Positions 12,474 to 63,224 of a stretch of DNA of 64,000 bases are shown piece by piece. The notes under the pieces are model-generated. The model saw nothing but the letters and a program-made list of their open reading frames with translations, had not been told where the DNA came from and did not search any database. The translations under genes were made by a program, and so were the position numbers. Position 1 is the stretch's first letter. Each line of letters begins with the position of its first letter. Location of the stretch: the IMG/VR virus record IMGVR_UViG_3300020195_000009, positions 124,001 to 188,000 of that record. One strand, 5' to 3'.

Positions 12474-15400
12474 TCAGGGAGCGAGGGGACGGCCGTTCTC
12501 GGCCTTGCCTGTCTGGACCGCCTGCGACTGGTCATCCTTGTATTGACCCATGTAGGGCTCGTCCGAGTCCGTCTGCTTGGGGGCCGTGGGGGCGTTGAAC
12601 GTCGGCATGTACTTCTCATCCGAGTCCTGCTGGATGACCTTCGCAGACTTGAGGACTTCCACCTGGCGCTTGGCGAGAGACTCATCCCCGTAGGTCGCCT
12701 TCTCGATGTCATCGGCCGTCCGATCGAGATCGTTGACGATGTTCTTGGCGGTCTCGAAGTCCATCCCCCACTTCGTGTGGTTCTCCTGAATGTAACCGGC
12801 GACCTTGTCGAGCCGGTCCAGGATGACGTTGGCTTGCTCCTTGGCGAATTTGACGGTCATGGCGTTTCCCTCTGTCTCTTCCGTTGAGGAGGTCTTTCGG
12901 ACCCCTGGTTTGGTTCCCGAAGTGGCTTTCTCCACCTTGAACCCGAACTTCTTACCTACGTCTTGAAGGGCTTTGAAAGCCTTATCGATGTCCGCTTCGG
13001 GGACTTGAACCCAAACAAGGGTCTCCACACGAAGGCCTTCCTTCTCTTGATGGAAGGTGAGGAAGCCGCCGCCACGGGTGTCCACGACCCGGAGATTAAC
13101 GTCGTGCTCCTTACCGTCGTCACCTTCGGTCGGGATCCACGTCTTGTTGATGGCGTTGATCGTGTCGATGTTGAAGGGAACCGGCTTACGGGTGGGGACA
13201 AAGAGCACGGTGATCGTGTCCACGCCGTAACCGAAACCAGCCGTGTGGACCGTCAACAAGGTCTCGCCCGCAGGTTGCGAGGCCAGTTTGGCGAGCATCA
13301 TGTTGTACAACGGAGCGGAGATCGCTCCGTTGTACTTGCCATCCTCAGCTCGTTGAATCGCGAGGTCCAAAGCGGCTCGGAATCGAGCATCAGGAACCAT
13401 CCCTTCGACGGACTTCGACAGGATGGGGGACTTGAGCCAGTCCTTGGCGGCTGCCAAGAGAGTTCCAAAGTCACTCGGCCCGAGGTCTCGTTGGTGAACC
13501 TGATGCCACTCGGGGTACGAGGCAAACCCCTCGTGACCCTTTGGGTAAGGCTCAACGCCATGATAGATGGCCGTACGGACCGCTTGGCGAGCGTCATCGA
13601 TGGAAAGCGGAGGGGTGCCCATCTGCCAATTTCGGTCCCGATAAGAAGAATAGAGAGAAGCGACCCGTAACGAACGAAGCTCGTCAAATTGCTCCTGACG
13701 GGCCGCTCGCTCCGCCTTGGAGGGCTTACCTTCGTAACCAAGAGGCTTCACTGGAGGCTCCGGGGCGAGCGGGGGTTCAGGTTCAGGAACCTCAAAGGGT
13801 TTTGAGGGGGTCCGATAAGGATCTCCTTTGGCCAACTCCTTCTCATGCTTGATTTTCGCCTTAGTCCACTCGGTGTGCTCTCGTTCAAAGGCCCTGTAGG
13901 CCTTTTTCTGTTCTGCTTCCGCAGCTTTGAACTCACCAATAGACTTCTCGTACGCCTCACCTTCTGCTTGTTTGAGGAACTCCTGGACCTGAGCTTCCTT
14001 TTTGGGATCAAGCCCGCGTAGGGACTGACGGACCCGAACTCGGAAGACCATAGATGGGTCATCAAGCGCAGCCTTTACCTCGGCTGGGTAACGCTTACCT
14101 GCTTTGCGGATCATCTCCGTTGCAGCGGTTAGCTTGTTGGCTATTACTCTCGGGTGGTCCCGCTCGGAGATGACGTCGTTGGACTTTGGATCCAAGAAGC
14201 GCTCATGAGCGGCTCGGTAGTCCTCCCCTTGGAGGTTGGCTACCGCCACCATCTGCGTGTGGGGATCCAGCTCCTTAAGGTTGGATAGGAGCTTATTTCG
14301 CTCTTGGTCCTTCAACGCCTCGCGTTTGGTATTTCTTGAGACCAAGCCAAACCTCTCATCAGGATCCTCACTAACTTGAGGGAACCCGGCAGATGCTTTA
14401 CTAAAGAGGTTTTGAGCTGCCTCTTTAGCTTTGGACTCTCGTTCTTCAGGTGGGAGTGAAGCAGAGGTCAGCGATAGATGAGCGAGGCTGGGTGCTAGGT
14501 GACTGGGAACACCAGACGATTTGAGGGCGTGTGAAACACGCATTTGGGTCGTAACACTAGCCGCTACAACTGCTACCCGATGCTCTTGTACAGCTTGAGC
14601 CTGCTCTTCTTTAGACAGCTCCTCAAATGGCTTTTCAATGCCGTCCGAAGCCTTCCCCTTCTTAGGGAGGGTCTTCACCAGAGCGGGATCCGTGGTGAAT
14701 GAAGCCCCACCATTTTGAATCTCATCTTGCACACTTCGAGGAGCTGGGAGGGACTTGAAGTCTAGGTAGTTCGCAACGACAGCCTTTACATCCTCTGGGT
14801 GCATCAACCTTAATTGAACACGGACCTGAGGAGGTAGGTCTGTGGTAAAGAGTAACTCTGTAGCCTCATGTATCTGTTGCTGAGTGGGGGGCTTTCGCTT
14901 CGGCGGGGGGAAGTCTTGGGCGCTCGTAGGCTTCTTCTCGGGAGCCTTCTCCTTCTCAGGGGCCTTCTCACCTTCAGGAGTCTTCTCACCTTCAGGAGTC
15001 TTCTCGGGGGTTTTCTCTTCCTCGGGGGGTTTCTTGGTGTCGACCTCAGCGGGAGCTTCCTGAGGTCTCTTCGTCCGCTGGGCTTTAGCTACAGGCTTTG
15101 GAACAAGCTCAAGAGCCTTCTTGAGGTCACCAAGGGTTTTGATTTCAGGTGGGAAATCTGCCTTGGGGAAGACCTCTTTTACAGGCTTGCCTGGGTTGCT
15201 ATCGGCGACAGCTTGCAACGCGGTAGCTGGATTTGAAAACGTACCTATGGCGCTCTTTAGGGCCGGGTCGTTCTTCGCTCGCTCTTGAAGCTCTTCCCCT
15301 CCGATACGAGCATCCAATTCCTTGATTGGCTCGTAGGGTGCCTTCGGCTCAGGGTTGAACTTGTCTCGCTTCTTGGGGGCCTCTTGTTTCGATTTAGGCT

Positions 15401-16400
15401 CCTCGGGCTTCTTGGGGGCCTCTTGTTTCGCAGGTCCAGGCTTTTTTTCAGTGTCTTCTGCTGCGGGATCTTCGGGTTTCTCAGTCCCAGGCTTGGGCTC
15501 TTCCTTGGGCTTCTCCTCTTCCTTGGGCTTCTCCTCTTCCTTGGGCTTCGGACCCATCAACTTAGGTGGTGGCTTCCCGTCTCTCTCCGCATCCTCGACC
15601 GCCTCAAAGTGATCATTGATCCACTTCGGGATCGACTTCGACCATGTGACCGCATCCCCCACGGTTTTGAACTTGGCAAGCTCAGGGTGACCTTCGAGCC
15701 CCTTCACCTCCGAAATGGGTGTGTCCTGCGGTAGATCGGAGATCGTTGACAGAGCCTTTTGAAAGACAGGATCCTTCTGGGTCTTTTCAAGAATCCCCTG
15801 GACGAAATCAAATTCCTTACGGTGCTCAGGAGCTAGGGGATCCGGCTCAGTTCCAGGTTTTTCCTCGCGGGTCTCTGGCTTACCCCCCTCGGGCTTATCT
15901 TCAGGCTTCTTATCTTCAGGCTTGACCGGCTTGTATCGGGAGGGGTTGTTCTTCGCCGTCGTCTCGGGAACCGAGACGACCTTTTTCTCCTCCGAATCGA
16001 AGACCGAGACGTACTTCTTGGGACCGGATTGAGCCGGCTTGCGCTCTTTGAGGTCTTTGCGCTTCTGGGTCCGCTTCTCTTTACGTCGCTGTTGGAACTT
16101 CGGGTTGGACTTAGCCTCCAGGTAGCGGCTCACCACCCGGTCCTCGATGGCCGGCTCCAGAAACCGATCCACAACCCTAGCAATCAGACCAACGGAACCC
16201 CCGACCCTTTTGTAATTGAGGGATAGGTCTGGGTCGCTCTTGGTGTCCGGGTCCCCCTCTACATCTGGATCTCGATCCGGCTGCATATCGTCACGACGAC
16301 GATCCCTGCGAGGGGGCTTCTTCTTGGGTTGAGGACGGACAAGGCGCTCCGCCTCATCATCCTCTTTCTCCCCATGCGTCTTCGTGGCCAGAAAATCCAT
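12474..16400 (-). CDS. Large (~1308 aa) putative internal head protein with P/E/K-rich repeats
   Basis: Long ORF between portal and protease genes. ATG at 16400 is 18 nt from a late motif (the track uses GTG at 16406). Two RVVxR[FY]L motifs near the N-terminus. Confidence 0.7.
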   Translation of the reverse strand: MDFLATKTHGEKEDDEAERLVRPQPKKKPPRRDRRRDDMQPDRDPDVEGDPDTKSDPDLSLNYKRVGGSVGLIARVVDRFLEPAIEDRVVSRYLEAKSNPKFQQRRKEKRTQKRKDLKERKPAQSGPKKYVSVFDSEEKKVVSVPETTAKNNPSRYKPVKPEDKKPEDKPEGGKPETREEKPGTEPDPLAPEHRKEFDFVQGILEKTQKDPVFQKALSTISDLPQDTPISEVKGLEGHPELAKFKTVGDAVTWSKSIPKWINDHFEAVEDAERDGKPPPKLMGPKPKEEEKPKEEEKPKEEPKPGTEKPEDPAAEDTEKKPGPAKQEAPKKPEEPKSKQEAPKKRDKFNPEPKAPYEPIKELDARIGGEELQERAKNDPALKSAIGTFSNPATALQAVADSNPGKPVKEVFPKADFPPEIKTLGDLKKALELVPKPVAKAQRTKRPQEAPAEVDTKKPPEEEKTPEKTPEGEKTPEGEKAPEKEKAPEKKPTSAQDFPPPKRKPPTQQQIHEATELLFTTDLPPQVRVQLRLMHPEDVKAVVANYLDFKSLPAPRSVQDEIQNGGASFTTDPALVKTLPKKGKASDGIEKPFEELSKEEQAQAVQEHRVAVVAASVTTQMRVSHALKSSGVPSHLAPSLAHLSLTSASLPPEERESKAKEAAQNLFSKASAGFPQVSEDPDERFGLVSRNTKREALKDQERNKLLSNLKELDPHTQMVAVANLQGEDYRAAHERFLDPKSNDVISERDHPRVIANKLTAATEMIRKAGKRYPAEVKAALDDPSMVFRVRVRQSLRGLDPKKEAQVQEFLKQAEGEAYEKSIGEFKAAEAEQKKAYRAFEREHTEWTKAKIKHEKELAKGDPYRTPSKPFEVPEPEPPLAPEPPVKPLGYEGKPSKAERAARQEQFDELRSLRVASLYSSYRDRNWQMGTPPLSIDDARQAVRTAIYHGVEPYPKGHEGFASYPEWHQVHQRDLGPSDFGTLLAAAKDWLKSPILSKSVEGMVPDARFRAALDLAIQRAEDGKYNGAISAPLYNMMLAKLASQPAGETLLTVHTAGFGYGVDTITVLFVPTRKPVPFNIDTINAINKTWIPTEGDDGKEHDVNLRVVDTRGGGFLTFHQEKEGLRVETLVWVQVPEADIDKAFKALQDVGKKFGFKVEKATSGTKPGVRKTSSTEETEGNAMTVKFAKEQANVILDRLDKVAGYIQENHTKWGMDFETAKNIVNDLDRTADDIEKATYGDESLAKRQVEVLKSAKVIQQDSDEKYMPTFNAPTAPKQTDSDEPYMGQYKDDQSQAVQTGKAENGRPLAP
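15501..15549. repeat. 18-bp tandem repeat (KPKEEE) inside the large ORF
   Basis: ttccttgggcttctcctc x~2.7; similar 18-bp EK[TA]PE[GK] units at ~14930-15010. Confidence 0.7.
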
Positions 16401-16436
16401 GCCCACCCCGGCTGGGCGAAAAGACGAGTATCGGTC

Positions 16437-18245
16437 CTAGAACCGGCCTTCTTCTGCGGCGGCTGGTTCTTCTTTGACGCTAAGGTTGAGGTACTTGGCG
16501 ATCTTGTCCATGATGTCGGTCTTTTCCGCGAGCATCCGGCCGACCTCCCCATAGATCCCGCGAATGACCTCGTTGAACACGGAGTCGTTGACCGAGAACA
16601 TGTCTCGCTCGATCTTCTCTTTCGTATCCGCTGGGTCGATGTTGAACATCTCCAGAATGAGGTCGATGGAGATGCTCCCCTTCTGGTACAAATTGAAGAG
16701 GGCGTCGTAGGTGTCCTGGCTGTCCCGAAGGGCCAGACGAGTGAAGGAGAGCCTTGGGATGAGGACAACCTCATCCCCCCAATCATCCTTCTCCACGAAC
16801 CCCTTGCGTCTTGCTACGGGCTTGAAGAGGTACTCCTCCACATACTCCTGGAGCATCTCTCTGAAGAGCAGATAGCGGGTGTTGAGGACCTCCAGCTTGA
16901 CTCGGTCTCCGGAGAACGTGCTCTCTCCGTTGAGAAGACTCTCGGTCACACCAAGGCCTGCGAAGAGCTGCTTATCCGTGATCTCGTATTCACCAGACAG
17001 ATCAAGGAGACGGTCACGGGCTCCGATCTCTTCCCAGTGGACCTCGTAGTTGGTGACGATCGAGTAGTCCGGGTCCACGAGAGCCAAGTCGACCTGCTCA
17101 CGAAGATCATCCGTATCAATGTCCGAAAGGTTCTCACCCCACACGAGACGCTTGGGCGTCATCGCTCGGTCGGCGATGAGCGTCTGGGCCTGCCGGAGCT
17201 TCTCTCGGTAGTACAGGATACGAAGACAACGATCGAGGAGGCTGGCCCCAAGCTCCTCACCAGCTCCACGTCGGGCCGTGAGATGGTAACAGAACGAACC
17301 CTCATCAGGATCCGTCCCAAGTGGGATCAACTGGCCAGATTCGATGTAGTCCCGCACTTCTTGGGGGATTTCTTCGACCATCCGCTGGGCCTTATCGTCC
17401 CCGATTTTGGCCTGCTCGATGAGGGCTCGGTCCCGGTCTGACGGGATTAGGTCGAGTTGAACCTTGTCCGTGAAGCTAAAAGAAGCGAGCTTGACCTGGT
17501 CGATAGGGAGGATGATGAGCTTGTCCCACCCCTTGTAATGCTGCTGATAGTACGCCAGCTCAAGGTCTTCTCGATCGTTAAGTTCCGTGATCGACTCTTC
17601 GACTTCCTCCACCCCGTTGCCGTCGTCATCGAGGGAAGACTTGACGTTCTTTTCGATCTTGTGCCCAACCTCGGGCGGTACGTCTACGGTCCCATCCTCA
17701 GCAAACAAGAACACGTTTCCATCGAGATGGTAGTGGTGAGCCCCCGTGATCAGCCGTTGAAACAGCTTGATCCGCTTGCACATCTTCTCAAAAAACGAGA
17801 GAATGTAACGGCCGTAATCTTCGGGGCTCTTGAACCTATCCGGGTGTGTCCGAGGGGTCGGTTTCGCTAGGCGAACCTTGGAGAGCGGAAGCTCTGTATG
17901 TAGGTCGATGGCCTGCCCTACAATAGGGTCTGTGTTGTAGAAGTGGCGATAAATCTCTCGCTTCTCACGAAGCGATTGGGGCAGTTGGAGGAAGTCTGTC
18001 GAGAGTTGGGGCGAGAAAAACGCCCCCTGACCCGACAATGTTGTGTGTCCACCACCGGCCCCACCCGTTGGAAACGCCCCGGCCGTCTTGTTCTGGCTCT
18101 GGCTGGCTCGACGAGCCATACGCTCCTTTTCGGTCAAATTGGTGATCCCACCCTTTGCCGAATAGGGGGCATGCAAGTAACGACCGATCTGCGTGTTCGC
18201 TAGAACGATGCCGTTTCGAGCATTGGTGAACCGATCAGCGGGCAC
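16437..18245 (-). CDS. Portal protein
   Basis: 602 aa in the head module; YRHFY..DPIVGQAIDLH, GNVF, G.SLL.R...L, LFAGLGV.ESLL.G segments typical of large-phage portals. Confidence 0.8.
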   Translation of the reverse strand: MPADRFTNARNGIVLANTQIGRYLHAPYSAKGGITNLTEKERMARRASQSQNKTAGAFPTGGAGGGHTTLSGQGAFFSPQLSTDFLQLPQSLREKREIYRHFYNTDPIVGQAIDLHTELPLSKVRLAKPTPRTHPDRFKSPEDYGRYILSFFEKMCKRIKLFQRLITGAHHYHLDGNVFLFAEDGTVDVPPEVGHKIEKNVKSSLDDDGNGVEEVEESITELNDREDLELAYYQQHYKGWDKLIILPIDQVKLASFSFTDKVQLDLIPSDRDRALIEQAKIGDDKAQRMVEEIPQEVRDYIESGQLIPLGTDPDEGSFCYHLTARRGAGEELGASLLDRCLRILYYREKLRQAQTLIADRAMTPKRLVWGENLSDIDTDDLREQVDLALVDPDYSIVTNYEVHWEEIGARDRLLDLSGEYEITDKQLFAGLGVTESLLNGESTFSGDRVKLEVLNTRYLLFREMLQEYVEEYLFKPVARRKGFVEKDDWGDEVVLIPRLSFTRLALRDSQDTYDALFNLYQKGSISIDLILEMFNIDPADTKEKIERDMFSVNDSVFNEVIRGIYGEVGRMLAEKTDIMDKIAKYLNLSVKEEPAAAEEGRF

Positions 18246-55515: not shown

Positions 55516-57572
<2,057 letters not shown>

Positions 57573-57793: not shown

Positions 57794-59200
57794 TCATTCG
57801 GCCCCTTTGATGTTCGCGACCGGCATCATGCGGTGGGCGATCTTGGCGATGCCTTCATCTTCGAGAACCGCAAGAACGGCATCGAGGTCCTTGTAGACGT
57901 GCTTGCATTCGTCGACCGGGATGTTCTTGTGGTTCGAGATGATCCCTTCGATCGTCACACCTGCAAACGTTCGCTGGACGTCGTGCATCTCAGCGTTGAT
58001 TCGATCCTGCTTGGGACCCAGGCTCTTCTTTGCCTTGCTTCGCCCAAGAGTCCGACCCGACCCGTGGTTGACGGAGTACCCGGACTTGGAGGCTCCAGCC
58101 TGAGCGAATAGGATCGCAGCTCCGTCGTACATCGAACCGGGGATGCAGCACGGGTGTCCTGTGTCCGCCCACTTCGTCCCCACGAGATCGGGATGCCCAG
58201 CCGGGAAGGCACGGGTTGCCCCTTTACGGTGGACGAAGCCCTTCTTCGTGGTGCCGTCGGGGAGGACCAGGGTTTCCTCTTGGACGAGGTTGTGGCTGAT
58301 CTCGTAGTAGACCTCGCCCTCAACGTTGAAAACCTCTTGGAGAGCCTCCTGGATGCCTTTGACGATGACGTGGCGGTTGGCCACGGCAAAGTTGGCAGCG
58401 CTGTTGTGGTAGCGCCAGTAGTCCTTCCCAACCTGCTCGTCCATCCGAAGCCAGGACTCTTCACGTCGGTTACTGGGAAGACCACGGGCCTTGGCCCCCT
58501 CGAAGAAGAAGTGATCGGCGGTTTGCCAGCCGTACCCCCGGCTCCCGCAATGGATCATCACCCAGACTTCTGCTGTGTCCCGATCCACCTGCATCTCGAT
58601 GAAATGGTTGCCTCCGCCGACACTACCAAGCTGAGGGATGACCTTCGAGTAGGCCTTCTGGACCATCTTGAAGTCGGTACCCTCCGGGATCGGGATGTAC
58701 TGACGTTCGCATAGGTCGGCTGAGACCCCCAAGGCCTTGGCTCCGAACCGGAGGATCTCATCGGCCTGGTTCTGGTTGAAGTGGGGCATGAGGTTGGGTC
58801 GTTCGGACCCAACCCCGGTCGCGATTCGCTTCTCGACCTCCTTGACCCAACGCTCCCGAGGGTACCGACCCCGAACCCCACTCGCCGTGAGCCCAGGGAC
58901 CTTCATGTAAAGGACCCCACACGAAATGTCGTAACCAGAACCCGACTGGATGATCGTGTCCTCGGTTACAACGACCCCACCGACAGGAATTCCGTATCCG
59001 ATATGACAATCGGGCATAAGGTAGGCGCCGATGACTCCCTCATAGGAGGCGCTCGTCTTGATCTGCTCCCACATGTTCTCTTCCGAGGAGTTGTAGAGAT
59101 CCTCGGACAAAAAGGCGTGCGCCTCCACCTTCATCTCGCCGACTTTTGGCAAGACATAGTGGTTGGAGCCGACCTTTTGCGCTGTGTACTTGAGGGACAT
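57794..59200 (-). CDS. rtcB: RtcB RNA ligase
   Basis: MPDCHIGYGIPVG, GYDISCG, GSVGGGNHFIE, HCGSRG, HN, HRKGAT, PGSM, HGSGR, YKD. Confidence 0.95.
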   Translation of the reverse strand: MSLKYTAQKVGSNHYVLPKVGEMKVEAHAFLSEDLYNSSEENMWEQIKTSASYEGVIGAYLMPDCHIGYGIPVGGVVVTEDTIIQSGSGYDISCGVLYMKVPGLTASGVRGRYPRERWVKEVEKRIATGVGSERPNLMPHFNQNQADEILRFGAKALGVSADLCERQYIPIPEGTDFKMVQKAYSKVIPQLGSVGGGNHFIEMQVDRDTAEVWVMIHCGSRGYGWQTADHFFFEGAKARGLPSNRREESWLRMDEQVGKDYWRYHNSAANFAVANRHVIVKGIQEALQEVFNVEGEVYYEISHNLVQEETLVLPDGTTKKGFVHRKGATRAFPAGHPDLVGTKWADTGHPCCIPGSMYDGAAILFAQAGASKSGYSVNHGSGRTLGRSKAKKSLGPKQDRINAEMHDVQRTFAGVTIEGIISNHKNIPVDECKHVYKDLDAVLAVLEDEGIAKIAHRMMPVANIKGAE

Positions 59201-61677: not shown

Positions 61678-62241
61678 TTACGCTGCGTGAGCGCCTACCA
61701 CGTAGTAGCCGTCACCGTGCTTGTGGGCCTTCGAGAGGTCCAGGTACGGCCCCCACGCTTCCGGGATCTTCCCCGCATCAATGAAGACCGGGTGAAGGGG
61801 GAGTGCATGAGGCTTGGCCGGCTTGCGGAGGAGGGTCATCTTGGCCTGCTCTGGTGTGCGCCCGCCCTTTCGGTCGTTGCACGGATAGCAGGAGGTCACG
61901 ATGTTGTCCCAGACCGTCTTTCCACCCTGCTTACGCGGGAGGACGTGGTCGTAGTTCAACTCCCTCATGGTGTACCGACCGCCGCAATACTGGCAGCGGA
62001 AGCCGTCACGGGTGAAGACGTTGATGCGGGAGAACTTGACACCCTTCTTGAAACCGCGAACCTGCTCTTTGAGCTGGAGTACGGCGGGGATGAAATACGA
62101 GGTCGACGGAGAACTGACCGTCTCTTCGTAATCCTCCAACACGGTGGCCTTCTCCTGGTACATGAGGCAGATCGCCTCCTCCCAGTTCAGGATCGCGTGG
62201 GGGAGTCCCCAGGAATTCAGAAGCAGTGTACGAGTCTCCAT
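61678..62241 (-). CDS. HNH endonuclease (McrA/HNH_5-like)
   Basis: LLLN...W.EA, FSRINVFTRDGFRCQYCG, DHVLP..QGG..W.N.V.SC..CN..KG.RTP. Confidence 0.9.
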   Translation of the reverse strand: METRTLLLNSWGLPHAILNWEEAICLMYQEKATVLEDYEETVSSPSTSYFIPAVLQLKEQVRGFKKGVKFSRINVFTRDGFRCQYCGGRYTMRELNYDHVLPRKQGGKTVWDNIVTSCYPCNDRKGGRTPEQAKMTLLRKPAKPHALPLHPVFIDAGKIPEAWGPYLDLSKAHKHGDGYYVVGAHAA

Positions 62242-62350: not shown

Positions 62351-62560
62351 CTAGGACGCTCGACCACTTGTCTGCTTACCCCTCGGGCGTCGGTACCAGA
62401 CAAAGAGCGCCTGACCGTAGGGGGTAGGGACCACATCCCTACCTAAGACCCTCACGCGGGTCTTCTTCTTCCAGTCAGCGTAGGCCCGGAACAGGTCCGG
62501 GGTCACCGGGAAGGGCTCCATCCCATCCGCAGGAGGGTTGAAGGAGGAGAGCAGTTTCAT
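62351..62560 (-). CDS. Small hypothetical protein
   Basis: The track start (62632) lies inside the tmRNA, so ATG 62560 (MKLLSS) is the plausible start. Confidence 0.45.
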   Translation of the reverse strand: MKLLSSFNPPADGMEPFPVTPDLFRAYADWKKKTRVRVLGRDVVPTPYGQALFVWYRRPRGKQTSGRAS

Positions 62561-62578
62561 GACTTTAGACCTAATTTG

Positions 62579-62925
62579 TGGAGCTGCGGGGTACTGCCCC
62601 CCGGTCCTCCAGAAGTCCGATGACGCCTTCATTCACGTACGTAGTCGAAGTATCCCCCTCGACTGAGTTCGTAGATTCGGCCACGACCTATTCCCGCTGT
62701 TCCTCTCGACCTTTGCACCGCAAGACACGTGCTCGGTCCAGCCCTAGTGGTTGACAGGCTCTCCGCTACCAGGACGATCTGGCGGGAACCCGGCCTTCAG
62801 GCCGCCTTGAGAGCGGTGAAAGCGAAAGCGTTGTCGTTGGCGACTAGCTTGTGCTCGATTGAACAGGTCGAGCGCTGTTGTACGCAGATGTCACTTCTTT
62901 CCAGAGTCGAATCTATTTCAGCCCC
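62579..62925 (-). ncRNA. ssrA: tmRNA (one-piece), tag peptide ANDNAFAFTALKAA
   Basis: 5' GGGGCTGAAATAGATTCGAC; 3' CAGCTCC-A with G3-U wobble; resume codon GCC at 62841 to TGA at 62797; T-arm CGGGG-GGCAGTA-CCCCG. Confidence 0.9.
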
Positions 62926-62973
62926 TTTCGTACTCCTACCCTACACCAAGAAGCATCGAAGAGCTAGTGCTAG

Positions 62974-63058
62974 TACCCGTAGAGGGAGTCGAACCCTCAG
63001 CGCCCACAAGGAGCCGCGAATTTTAAATTCACTGCGTCTGCCATTCCGCCACACGGGC
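62974..63058 (-). tRNA. tRNA-Leu(TAA)
   Basis: GCCCGTG/TACGGGT acceptor, TGGCGGAATGGCAGACGC D-arm, loop TT-TAA-AA, long variable arm, GGTTCGACTCC. Confidence 0.9.
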
Positions 63059-63062
63059 CTAG

Positions 63063-63143
63063 TACTCAGGAAGGGGATCGAACCCTCACGGTTTTACCCG
63101 GTGGATTTTGAATCCACTGCGTCTGCCATTCCGCCACCTGAGC
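63063..63143 (-). tRNA. tRNA-Leu(CAA)
   Basis: GCTCAGG/CCTGAGT acceptor, loop TT-CAA-AA, variable arm CGGGTAAAACCG, GGTTCGATCCC. Confidence 0.9.
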
Positions 63144-63152
63144 AAGAAACAG

Positions 63153-63224
63153 TGCGCCATCTAGGAGTTGAACCTAGCCACCCCGCATATCAGACGGGGC
63201 CGTTCACCGGAAACATCATGGCGC
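63153..63224 (-). tRNA. Atypical tRNA-Ile(GAT)
   Basis: GCGCCAT/ATGGCGC acceptor plus A, loop CT-GAT-AT, T-arm CTAGG-TTCAACT-CCTAG; G at position 8 and an unusual D-arm. Confidence 0.7.

What the first reader, a model, noticed from the sequence alone, without database searches (positions are those of the whole stretch)
62579..62925. Phage tmRNA with a non-TTC T-loop (GGCAGTA) in unpermuted form
Seen: a full 347-nt ssrA with tag ANDNAFAFTALKAA (ClpXP-type AA end), G3-U alanine identity, T-loop GGCAGTA and no encoded CCA. Known (from recall): this T-loop type is typical of alphaproteobacterial tmRNAs, which are mostly two-piece and permuted, and phage tmRNAs are uncommon. Inference: a divergent tmRNA lineage that may be informative about the host or about nuclease evasion. 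It is invisible in the ORF track and overlapped by two spurious ORFs.
Basis: partly seen in the sequence, partly recalled or inferred. Interest (0 to 1): 0.62.

Follow-up and report, generated by a model that had tools for sequence, protein, structure and literature searches.

The report
Huge-phage tmRNA with switched elbow
A very large phage from a microbial mat carries a genuine one-piece ribosome-rescue RNA (tmRNA) whose tRNA-like 'elbow' has flipped to a rare alternative form that sister phages lack, that a few bacterial groups also use, and that the standard finder ARAGORN cannot see.

Summary
Window 62925→62579 (minus strand) is a complete 347-nt standard tmRNA: Rfam RF00023 at 76.9 bits, G3·U70, discriminator A, tag ANDNAFAFTALKAA, T-arm CGGGG-GGCAGUA-CCCCG, no encoded CCA. 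It closes a 45-tRNA array in a ≥286-kb phage. ARAGORN misses it solely because of the seven T-loop bases.

The GGCAGUA loop is typical of permuted alpha-type genes (12/12 tested hit alpha_tmRNA). It is also the native, only ssrA of small Myxococcota and Gemmatimonadota clades, in one-piece form, and occurs in at least 13 other viral contigs. Five syntenic orthologues exist in related phages. Four have canonical UUCGAYU loops and one has an intermediate UGCGAUC. The window's RNA body is closest to these orthologues. So the elbow switched within this phage lineage and is not an alphaproteobacterial inheritance.

The switch is coordinated: T-loop U55 goes with D-loop GG (19/19) and G55 with AG (145/146).

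Function inferred: trans-translation using host SmpB, AlaRS and CCA-adding enzyme, none of which is found in the record. Support comes from stem covariation, in-frame tag length changes, strong conservation in a second metagenome, and a metatranscriptome contig. There is no evidence for nuclease evasion, and the host remains unknown.

The parts
62579..62925 (-). mature tmRNA (ssrA), 347 nt from G1 (62925) to discriminator A (62579)
   Evidence: RF00023 at 76.9 bits, E 4e-28, full-length; direct reading
62919..62925 (-). acceptor stem 5' strand GGGGCUG (G3 at 62923)
   Evidence: Pairs with 62580-62586. G3-U70 kept in 29/29 relatives; pairs 4-7 show 8/14/4/2 double changes
62580..62586 (-). acceptor stem 3' strand CAGCUCC (U70 at 62582)
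62907..62918 (-). D-loop analogue AAAUAGAUUCGA; A12 G13 at 62914-62913 where the Rfam consensus has G G
   Evidence: alignment. AG goes with T-loop G55 in 145/146 genes and GG with U55 in 19/19
62587..62603 (-). T arm: stem CGGGG/CCCCG around the loop GGCAGUA (loop 62592-62598)
   Evidence: stem covariation 5/11/5 double changes. Swapping the 7 loop bases in silico makes ARAGORN call the gene
62604..62614 (-). conserved GGAC (62604-62607) plus the 3' strand of helix P2a (62607-62614, sharing G319)
   Evidence: P2a 20-27/312-319: 81% of cells paired, 39 double-changed cells
62899..62906 (-). 5' strand of helix P2a (CUCUGGAA)
62880..62885 (-). upper P2 5' strand GCGUAC, pairing with 62635-62640
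   Evidence: 87% paired, 18 double-changed cells
62853..62879 (-). pseudoknot PK1 (stem 1 ACAG/CUGU, stem 2 GCUCG/CGAGC)
   Evidence: Stem 2: 83% paired over 29 sequences. Stem 1 seen only by eye in the closest relatives
62797..62841 (-). tag reading frame: resume GCC (62839-62841), ANDNAFAFTALKAA, stop UGA (62797-62799) in the loop of a GGCC/GGCC hairpin
   Evidence: The six orthologues keep ANDN...AA-UGA with tags of 10-20 aa, so the length differences preserve the reading frame
62641..62796 (-). 3' pseudoknot domain (PK2-PK4 region). Only one PK2 stem (62770-62775 / 62741-62746) is well supported
   Evidence: PK2 stem 84% paired, 30 double-changed cells. The PK4 part aligns poorly to Rfam
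62576..62578 (-). 3' trailer CAA: no encoded CCA
   Evidence: Only 9/47 of the phage's tRNA genes encode CCA
62973..63224 (-). tRNA-Leu(UAA), tRNA-Leu(CAA) and tRNA-Ile(GAU): the 3' end of the 45-tRNA array that the tmRNA terminates
62351..62560 (-). 69-aa ORF of unknown function, starting 16 nt after the tmRNA trailer
   Evidence: no Pfam hit
61678..62241 (-). HNH endonuclease gene, the conserved downstream neighbour in all syntenic relatives
57794..59200 (-). RtcB RNA ligase (RNA-repair context)
   Evidence: PF01139, 290 bits
62729..63268 (+). spurious 179-aa ORF antisense to the tmRNA and three tRNAs
62578..62754 (+). spurious 58-aa ORF antisense to the tmRNA

Best explanation
It is a functional, phage-encoded, standard (one-piece) tmRNA. 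It is transcribed with the 45-tRNA array and cut out by tRNA-processing enzymes. A host enzyme completes its 3' end with CCA, and host AlaRS charges it with alanine through G3-U70. Host SmpB and EF-Tu then deliver it to stalled ribosomes, where translation resumes at GCC and appends ANDNAFAFTALKAA before stopping at UGA. This frees ribosomes during infection and marks the truncated products. What is unusual is the tRNA-like elbow. The D-loop purine equivalent to tRNA G18 is A, and the T-loop reads GGCAGUA instead of UUCGAYU. This coordinated alternative state arose within this phage lineage. The same state is found in alpha-type two-piece tmRNAs and in the native tmRNAs of small Myxococcota and Gemmatimonadota clades. 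Shown: the gene, its architecture, its conservation, the covariation and the orthology. Inferred: processing, charging, dependence on host SmpB, tagging and the fate of tagged proteins.
For: Gene and fold: full-length RF00023 hit, with compensatory changes in the acceptor stem, T stem, P2, PK1 stem 2 and a PK2 stem across 29 relatives. Coding constraint on the tag: six orthologues keep GCN-AAC-GAY-AAC...GCN-GCN-UGA with tags of 10, 12, 14, 14, 14 and 20 aa. L177's ANDNAVAFPALKAA is close to the window's tag. Purifying selection: an independent sediment metagenome (X2) has a contig with 2 listed substitutions in the 350-nt gene, both in unpaired positions, against 19 in the 276 nt downstream. 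Fisher p = 1.3e-5, or 1.5e-3 in the worst case. RNA: a metatranscriptome (X13) holds a 307-nt contig covering RNA positions 1-286 with 9 differences, and has zero coverage of the flanking coding DNA. Host dependence: no SmpB, AlaRS, CCA-adding enzyme or ClpP in the 286-kb record. There is also no SmpB in five other phage records with this tmRNA type, one of them 100% complete. Switch within the lineage: tmRNAs at the same locus in L175-L179 have canonical (4) or intermediate (1) T-loops, and the body-only tree and identities place the window next to them. Coordinated elbow: U55 with GG in 19/19 and G55 with AG in 145/146, including 100/101 genes selected on the T-loop alone. Cellular precedent: the same one-piece form is the only tmRNA above cut-off in five bacterial genomes of 2.5-9.3 Mb.
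Against: There is no direct evidence of aminoacylation, SmpB binding or tagging. The RNA evidence is an assembled contig from a relative (about 97% identical). It shows presence in an RNA library but not the ends or the level, and it does not cover the T-arm. The record is only about 60% complete by CheckV, so a phage SmpB or CCA-adding enzyme could lie in the missing part. The tag ends in LKAA rather than the LAA of classic ClpX degrons, so the fate of tagged proteins is uncertain. PK3 and PK4 are not resolved, and Rfam aligns the PK4 region poorly. A GGCAGUA loop lacks U54 and U55, the usual modification sites, and what that does to function is untested.
Confidence: 0.8

Rival explanations
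1. One reading: it belongs to a separate, alpha-like tmRNA lineage, for example a re-permuted descendant of a two-piece alphaproteobacterial gene. On this view its T-loop reports the host or donor.
For: GGCAGUA with D-loop AAAUAG is the alpha two-piece signature. Tags beginning ANDN are shared. A 're-permuted' mitochondrial gene in Jakoba libera is a precedent (PMC11915505).
Against: Syntenic orthologues in five related phages are one-piece with canonical or intermediate loops, and the window's body is closest to them. One-piece GGCAGUA genes are native in non-alpha bacteria. The window hits neither RF01849 nor RF04321.
Confidence: 0.07
2. The elbow was imported rather than evolved in place. 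Recombination or gene conversion with a GGCAGUA-type tmRNA (from the host or a co-infecting phage) replaced the D-loop and T-arm while the body stayed. On this view it adapts the RNA to the SmpB of a host that itself uses this elbow.
For: The state is identical in sequence to that of cellular and other phage tmRNAs. Canonical and variant types are intermixed among phage tmRNAs. All these phages lack SmpB, so compatibility with host SmpB should matter.
Against: Two separate short tracts at opposite ends of the gene would have to be converted. The acceptor stem is identical to that of canonical-loop L175. L179 has AAAUAG with UGCGAUC, an intermediate that fits stepwise change in place. No donor has been identified, and the host is unknown.
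Confidence: 0.15
3. It does not rescue ribosomes. Instead it acts as a decoy that titrates host SmpB, as proposed for the TLD-only RNA of mycobacteriophage DS6A, or it is a decaying relic.
For: TLD-only mini-genes with this same T-loop exist in viral contigs (L032 and L038). DS6A-type inhibition is reported in PMC4131195. The elbow is unusual and the degron end (LKAA) is atypical.
Against: The resume context UAGUC-GCC, the tag frame, the stop-codon hairpin, PK1 and P2 are all kept, and indels preserve the reading frame across orthologues. There is strong conservation in X2.
Confidence: 0.05
4. The altered T-loop is an adaptation to escape a host nuclease or defence that cuts T-loops.
For: The gene sits beside a tRNA array and RtcB, a setting consistent with conflict over RNA damage. 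T-loop-cutting toxins are known (from my own knowledge, not tested here).
Against: The phage's own tRNAs keep canonical T-loops (44/47). The identical loop is native in bacteria. Sister phages with similar tRNA arrays (RtcB also in L175) keep UUCGAYU.
Confidence: 0.03

Closest known systems
Standard one-piece bacterial tmRNA (Rfam RF00023), e.g. E. coli SsrA
   Same: Overall architecture: acceptor stem with G3-U70, D-loop analogue ending UCGAC, GGAC, T arm, long P2, PK1, resume codon after UAGUC, ANDN...AA tag, stop codon in a hairpin loop, and a 3' pseudoknot domain.
   Different: T-loop GGCAGUA instead of UUCGAAU-like, and D-loop AG instead of GG. No encoded CCA. Tag ends LKAA. Encoded by a phage with no SmpB in the record.
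Alphaproteobacterial two-piece (permuted) tmRNA, Rfam RF01849 / RF04321, including phage copies such as the one in OM43 phage Melnitz (PMC9004378)
   Same: Identical T-loop GGCAGUA and D-loop ...AAAUAG..., and ANDN tags. PMC1168896 records the U-to-G T-loop changes in Caulobacter and the Reclinomonas mitochondrion.
   Different: The gene order here is not permuted (full 1-374 match to the standard model), and the body is orthologous to canonical-loop one-piece genes of sister phages.
Native one-piece tmRNAs of a Myxococcota subclade and a Gemmatimonadaceae subclade (L139-L171)
   Same: One-piece, GGCAGUA T-loop, AG D-loop, ANDN tags (ANDNAFALAA, ANDNSFALAA, ANDNLALAA), mostly no encoded CCA, all missed by ARAGORN.
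   Different: Only 45-51% identical to the window. They form separate clades in both trees. Their tags are shorter and end in the canonical ALAA or AMAA.
Known phage tmRNAs (mycobacteriophage Bxz1 group, Bacillus phage G, huge phages of Al-Shayeb et al. 2020)
   Same: A tmRNA carried by a large phage together with many tRNAs and other translation-related genes (PMC4131195, PMC7162821).
   Different: Those surveys found tmRNAs with ARAGORN, which cannot see this form. I did not compare sequences with these phages. blastn of the window against 50,697 GenBank phage records found nothing.

Membership tests
tmRNA, standard form (RF00023) | Covariance-model match over the whole model, above the curated threshold | tested here: met
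   76.9 bits against a gathering score of 47, model 1-374, E 4e-28
tmRNA, standard form (RF00023) | Alanine identity: 7-bp acceptor stem with G3-U70 and discriminator A | tested here: met
   GGGGCUG/CAGCUCC followed by A; G-U kept in 29/29 relatives
tmRNA, standard form (RF00023) | T arm of 5 bp with a 7-nt loop of the UUCRANY type, and a D-loop with GG | tested here: not met
   The stem and loop length are met, but the loop is GGCAGUA and the D-loop has AG. This is a coordinated alternative also used by bona fide cellular tmRNAs, so it does not exclude membership.
tmRNA, standard form (RF00023) | Unpermuted order: 5' acceptor strand, PK1, tag, pseudoknots, T arm, 3' acceptor strand | tested here: met
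tmRNA, standard form (RF00023) | Tag reading frame with a GCN resume codon after PK1, C-terminal AA, and the stop codon in a hairpin | tested here: met
   ANDNAFAFTALKAA-UGA; frame conserved, with length differences that preserve it, in six orthologues
tmRNA, standard form (RF00023) | Helices supported by compensatory changes (P1, P2, PK1, PK2, T stem) | tested here: met
   PK1 stem 1, helix 5, PK3 and PK4 are inconclusive on the MAFFT alignment.
tmRNA, standard form (RF00023) | 3' CCA end | tested here: not met
   The genome encodes ACAA. CCA would have to be added after transcription, as for 38/47 of the phage's tRNAs. Addition itself is not testable here.
tmRNA, standard form (RF00023) | Works with SmpB; is alanylated; tags proteins | not testable with these tools
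   No SmpB or AlaRS in the record. Needs biochemistry.
tmRNA, standard form (RF00023) | Expressed as a stable RNA | tested here: inconclusive
   A metatranscriptome contig of a ~97% identical relative covers positions 1-286, and the flanks have zero coverage. This is contigs only, with no ends or levels.
Alpha two-piece tmRNA (RF01849 / RF04321) | Circularly permuted gene: T arm and CCA upstream of the 5' acceptor strand | tested here: not met
   The 5' strand lies 347 nt upstream of the 3' end. No RF01849 or RF04321 hit in the window.
Alpha two-piece tmRNA (RF01849 / RF04321) | T-loop GGCAGUA with D-loop ...UAG... | tested here: met

The most novel reading that the evidence does not exclude
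The tmRNA elbow has two discrete, interconvertible solutions: D-loop G with T-loop U55 (canonical), or D-loop A with G55, the latter ending in GGCAGUA with UGCGAUC as a stepping stone. The alternative has arisen repeatedly: in alphaproteobacteria and mitochondria, in narrow Myxococcota and Gemmatimonadota clades, and several times in huge phages, here within one phage lineage. Because ARAGORN accepts it only in permuted genes, standard-form tmRNAs of this kind have been systematically overlooked in phage and MAG surveys. The state may track which SmpB or T-loop-modifying enzymes the host has.
Probability: 0.4. Interest if true: 0.6.

Novelty: new variant of a known kind. Interest (0 to 1): 0.5.

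Why it matters
Three points matter.

1. Practical: a whole class of standard-form tmRNAs is invisible to ARAGORN. It found 0 of 47 here, against 70 of 117 permuted genes with the same loop. ARAGORN is the tool used for tmRNA calls in major huge-phage surveys, so counts of phage and MAG tmRNAs are likely too low. Rfam's covariance model still finds these genes.

2. Structural: the near-perfect D-loop/T-loop covariation (164 of 165 genes) pinpoints a tertiary contact in the tmRNA elbow. The six orthologues form a natural mutational series (canonical, intermediate, full variant) in one genetic background. That series is ready for SmpB-binding, alanylation and modification experiments.

3. Evolutionary: the loop should not be read as a marker of alphaproteobacterial descent or host. 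It is a recurrent character state.

The gene itself is an ordinary kind of thing, a phage tmRNA. The interest lies in the elbow switch and the annotation blind spot.

Tried and rejected
- blastn of the tmRNA and of 14 kb of the window against 50,697 GenBank phages found no match.
- The genome search 'own' with RF00023 returned only tRNAs and missed the tmRNA. This is a limit of that tool's first look, since cmscan finds the gene.
- The search for related loci with the VWA neighbour in viral contigs found no relatives.
I rewrote it with the tag start as an anchor.
- The window's terminase was not found in the records of L138, L071, L046, L131 or L129, so those GGCAGUA-type phages are not close kin.
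- More distant GroEL relatives L172 and L173 have no tmRNA within 10 kb. The NCBI record behind L173 is not held as a genome.
- TAG recoding, suggested by the two tRNA(CUA) genes: stop-to-stop statistics give no signal. No alternative code was used anywhere.
- The pseudoknot-free MFE fold of the RNA conflicts with the comparative helices in the middle of the molecule, so I did not use it there.
- No sigma-70 promoter or intrinsic terminator lies near the gene.
- Keiler 2000 and Sharkady & Williams 2004 are not held.
- The supplement of the 2025 tmRNA database paper lists only per-phylum counts. I could not tell whether standard-form GGCAGUA sequences are already in that database.
- The host could not be assigned. 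The GroEL word search returns unnamed metagenome proteins.

Full report
**1. The observation**

The window is bases 124001-188000 of a 286,005-bp IMG/VR virus record with 57% G+C, which CheckV rates about 60% complete. PHROG and Pfam hits confirm a phage: large terminase, class II RNR, NAD-dependent ligase, RecD-like helicase, GroEL and RtcB.

On the minus strand, cmscan finds a full-length standard tmRNA (RF00023) at 62925->62576. It scores 76.9 bits against a gathering score of 47, with E 4e-28.
- acceptor stem GGGGCUG/CAGCUCC with G3-U70
- discriminator A at 62579, followed by CAA rather than CCA
- T stem CGGGG/CCCCG enclosing GGCAGUA
- resume codon GCC after UAGUC
- tag ANDNAFAFTALKAA
- stop UGA in the loop of a GGCC/GGCC hairpin

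ARAGORN finds three tRNAs next to it but not the tmRNA. Two antisense ORFs overlap it. A regex scan finds this as the only tmRNA-type T-arm in the genome.

**2. Context**

The tmRNA is the last gene of a 45-tRNA array on the minus strand, at genome 186973-203829.
- Downstream lie a 69-aa ORF, an HNH endonuclease, a VWA-domain protein and RtcB.
- No sigma-70 promoter or intrinsic terminator flanks it. I infer from this that it is processed out of the array transcript.
- Only 9 of 47 tRNA genes encode CCA, and 44 of 47 have canonical T-loops.
- The record has no SmpB, AlaRS, CCA-adding enzyme or ClpP.

**3. Where else the T-loop occurs**

- In about 100 of them the complementary 5' acceptor strand lies 7-180 nt downstream of the CCA, so the gene is permuted.
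- All 12 permuted loci tested hit Rfam alpha_tmRNA at 67-143 bits.
- PMC1168896 notes the U-to-G T-loop changes in Caulobacter and the Reclinomonas mitochondrion.

A pattern that forces the one-piece order gave two sets of hits.
- It found 13 viral contigs, many of 50-280 kb.
- It found 33 cellular contigs: Myxococcota MAGs, Gemmatimonadaceae MAGs and one short Acidobacteriota contig, some on contigs larger than 1 Mb.
- In five of these bacterial genomes, this gene is the only tmRNA above the Rfam cut-off, at 97-140 bits. It is therefore their native ssrA.
- The state is rare in both phyla. About 2-3 of 201 sampled Myxococcota genomes have it, against 178 with a canonical T-arm. In Gemmatimonadota, only the seed genome out of 81 has it.

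ARAGORN results across the collected loci:
- It finds none of the 47 one-piece loci.
- It finds 70 of 117 permuted loci with the same loop.
- Replacing only the seven loop bases of the window's gene in silico makes it call the gene with the predicted tag.

**4. It is a constrained, structured RNA**

In an alignment of 29 one-piece relatives, compensatory double changes support several helices:
- the acceptor stem (8/14/4/2 at pairs 4-7)
- the T stem (5/11/5)
- P2a (39 double-changed cells)
- upper P2
- PK1 stem 2
- one PK2 stem (30 double-changed cells)

G3-U70 is invariant. PK1 stem 1, helix 5 and the PK3/PK4 region are not resolved by that alignment.

An independent sediment metagenome (X2) holds a close relative.
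- It has 2 listed substitutions inside the gene: C59U in the PK1 loop and U295C in an internal loop.
- The 276 nt downstream carry 19 substitutions.
- Fisher p is 1.3e-5, or 1.5e-3 if all unlisted differences fell inside the gene.

A sediment metatranscriptome (X13) holds a 307-nt contig.
- It covers RNA positions 1-286 with 9 differences.
- Nothing in X13 covers the flanking coding DNA.
- This is suggestive of expression but is not proof.

**5. The decisive comparison: orthologues in sister phages**

The phage's GroEL has relatives at 64-80% identity on contigs up to 470 kb. Five of them (L175-L179) share the gene order tRNAs, tmRNA, HNH, VWA, (RtcB), GroEL, clamp loader, RNR, ligase, helicase. 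Each has a tmRNA at the same place. Their TLDs differ:

| Locus | D-loop | T-loop | ARAGORN |
|---|---|---|---|
| L175, L176, L177, L178 | GG | UUCGACU or UUCGAUU | found |
| L179 | AAAUAG | UGCGAUC | found |
| Window | AAAUAG | GGCAGUA | missed |

- The acceptor stem of L175 is identical to the window's.
- L177's tag (ANDNAVAFPALKAA) is nearly the window's.
- Tag lengths are 10-20 aa with frame, ANDN start, AA end and UGA stop all conserved, which shows coding constraint.
- With the first ~20 and last ~29 nt removed, the window's RNA is nearest to L177 (67% identity), then L179, L178 and L175. All of these are closer than the GGCAGUA-type genes of other phages.
- Canonical and variant types are intermixed in the tree.

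The elbow therefore changed state within this lineage. The gene is not a transplanted or re-permuted alpha gene.

**6. A coordinated two-state elbow**

I tabulated all collected genes, including 15 canonical Myxococcota tmRNAs fetched as a control. One search gives the result:
- T-loop U55 goes with D-loop GG in 19/19.
- T-loop G55 (GGCAGUA or UGCGAUC) goes with D-loop AG in 145/146.
- Among genes selected only on the T-loop, the figure is 100/101.

By analogy with the tRNA G18-psi55 and G19-C56 elbow contacts (established tRNA knowledge), I infer that the first D-loop purine contacts position 55 and that the two sites co-vary. The GGCAGUA loop also lacks U54 and U55, the usual m5U and pseudouridine sites. 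The consequence of that is unknown.

**7. Mechanism and rivals**

The best-supported reading is a working tmRNA that relies on host SmpB, AlaRS, EF-Tu and a CCA-adding enzyme. None of six phage records with this tmRNA type encodes SmpB, and one of them is complete.
- The LKAA ending is shared with L177 but differs from the ALAA or AMAA of the cellular relatives. The fate of tagged proteins may therefore differ.
- Import of the elbow by recombination remains possible. L179's intermediate state and the shared acceptor stem make it less likely.
- A decoy or relic role is unlikely, given the conserved tag frame.
- Nuclease evasion has no support.

**8. Host**

The source is a microbial mat, with relatives in sediments. 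The tmRNA does not nest within the Myxococcota or Gemmatimonadota clades. The elbow is labile, so it cannot name the host. If SmpB compatibility matters, the host might itself use this elbow, but that is speculation.

**9. Novelty**

Phage tmRNAs are known:
- 79 unique sequences in the 2025 database (PMC11915505)
- 402 of 18,146 phage genomes (PMC9004378)
- huge phages (PMC7162821)

The held literature mentions the U-to-G loop changes only for alphaproteobacteria and mitochondria. I found no description of standard-form GGCAGUA tmRNAs, of the D-loop covariation, or of a switch between sister genes. I could not check the tmRNA database itself. I rate this a new variant of a known kind, of moderate interest.

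Noticed in passing
genome 239885-239962 and 241106-241182 (minus strand; outside the window): Two tRNA genes with anticodon CUA (amber suppressors; ARAGORN labels them 'Pyl'), far from the main tRNA array. Stop-to-stop statistics give no sign of genome-wide TAG recoding.
   Followed up: partly
window 12474-18245 (-): ORFs 16437-18245 (602 aa) and 12474-16406 (1310 aa) are in the same frame and separated by a single TAG. Given the suppressor tRNAs, this could be one read-through protein of about 1,900 aa, or simply two adjacent genes.
   Followed up: no
L032 (68 nt, ending at about 3679, + strand) and L038 (78 nt, - strand): tRNA-sized 'TLD-only' genes with acceptor stem, AUAG D-loop, GGCAGUA T-loop and encoded CCA, but no tag or pseudoknots. 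They resemble the SmpB-titrating mini-tmRNA reported for mycobacteriophage DS6A (PMC4131195). No Rfam family reaches threshold on them.
   Followed up: partly
L139-L171 (cellular loci): The GGCAGUA-type tmRNAs of Gemmatimonadaceae and of a Myxococcota subclade group together in both trees, although the state is rare in each phylum. Whether this is horizontal transfer of ssrA between phyla or convergence is open.
   Followed up: partly
L134:11978-12348: In this phage tmRNA the tag frame has lost its stop and runs on (ANDNGVAPFALAALGTGVPATLEQ...). L158's tag ends in LTG and L133's in LVA. Phage tags are more variable at the degron end than cellular ones.
   Followed up: no
window 62968-63098: In the closely related phage of metagenome X2, the stretch holding tRNA-Leu(UAA) and part of tRNA-Leu(CAA) is replaced by 652 other letters, so the tRNA array next to the tmRNA is being remodelled (table 5).
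   Followed up: no
L172:1672-2289: A more distant relative encodes a ClpP protease a few kb from the syntenic site but has no tmRNA within 10 kb. The window's record has no ClpP.
   Followed up: no
window 62576-62925: the genome search 'own' with RF00023 listed only tRNAs and missed this tmRNA, whereas cmscan scores it 76.9 bits. The quick first look of that tool seems to share ARAGORN's blind spot.
   Followed up: no
L175:9248-9613, L172:7730-8104: Relatives carry a small tRNA_bind (PF01588) protein just upstream of GroEL. The window's 126-aa ORF at 57192-57572 (-) occupies the same position but was not scanned.
   Followed up: no
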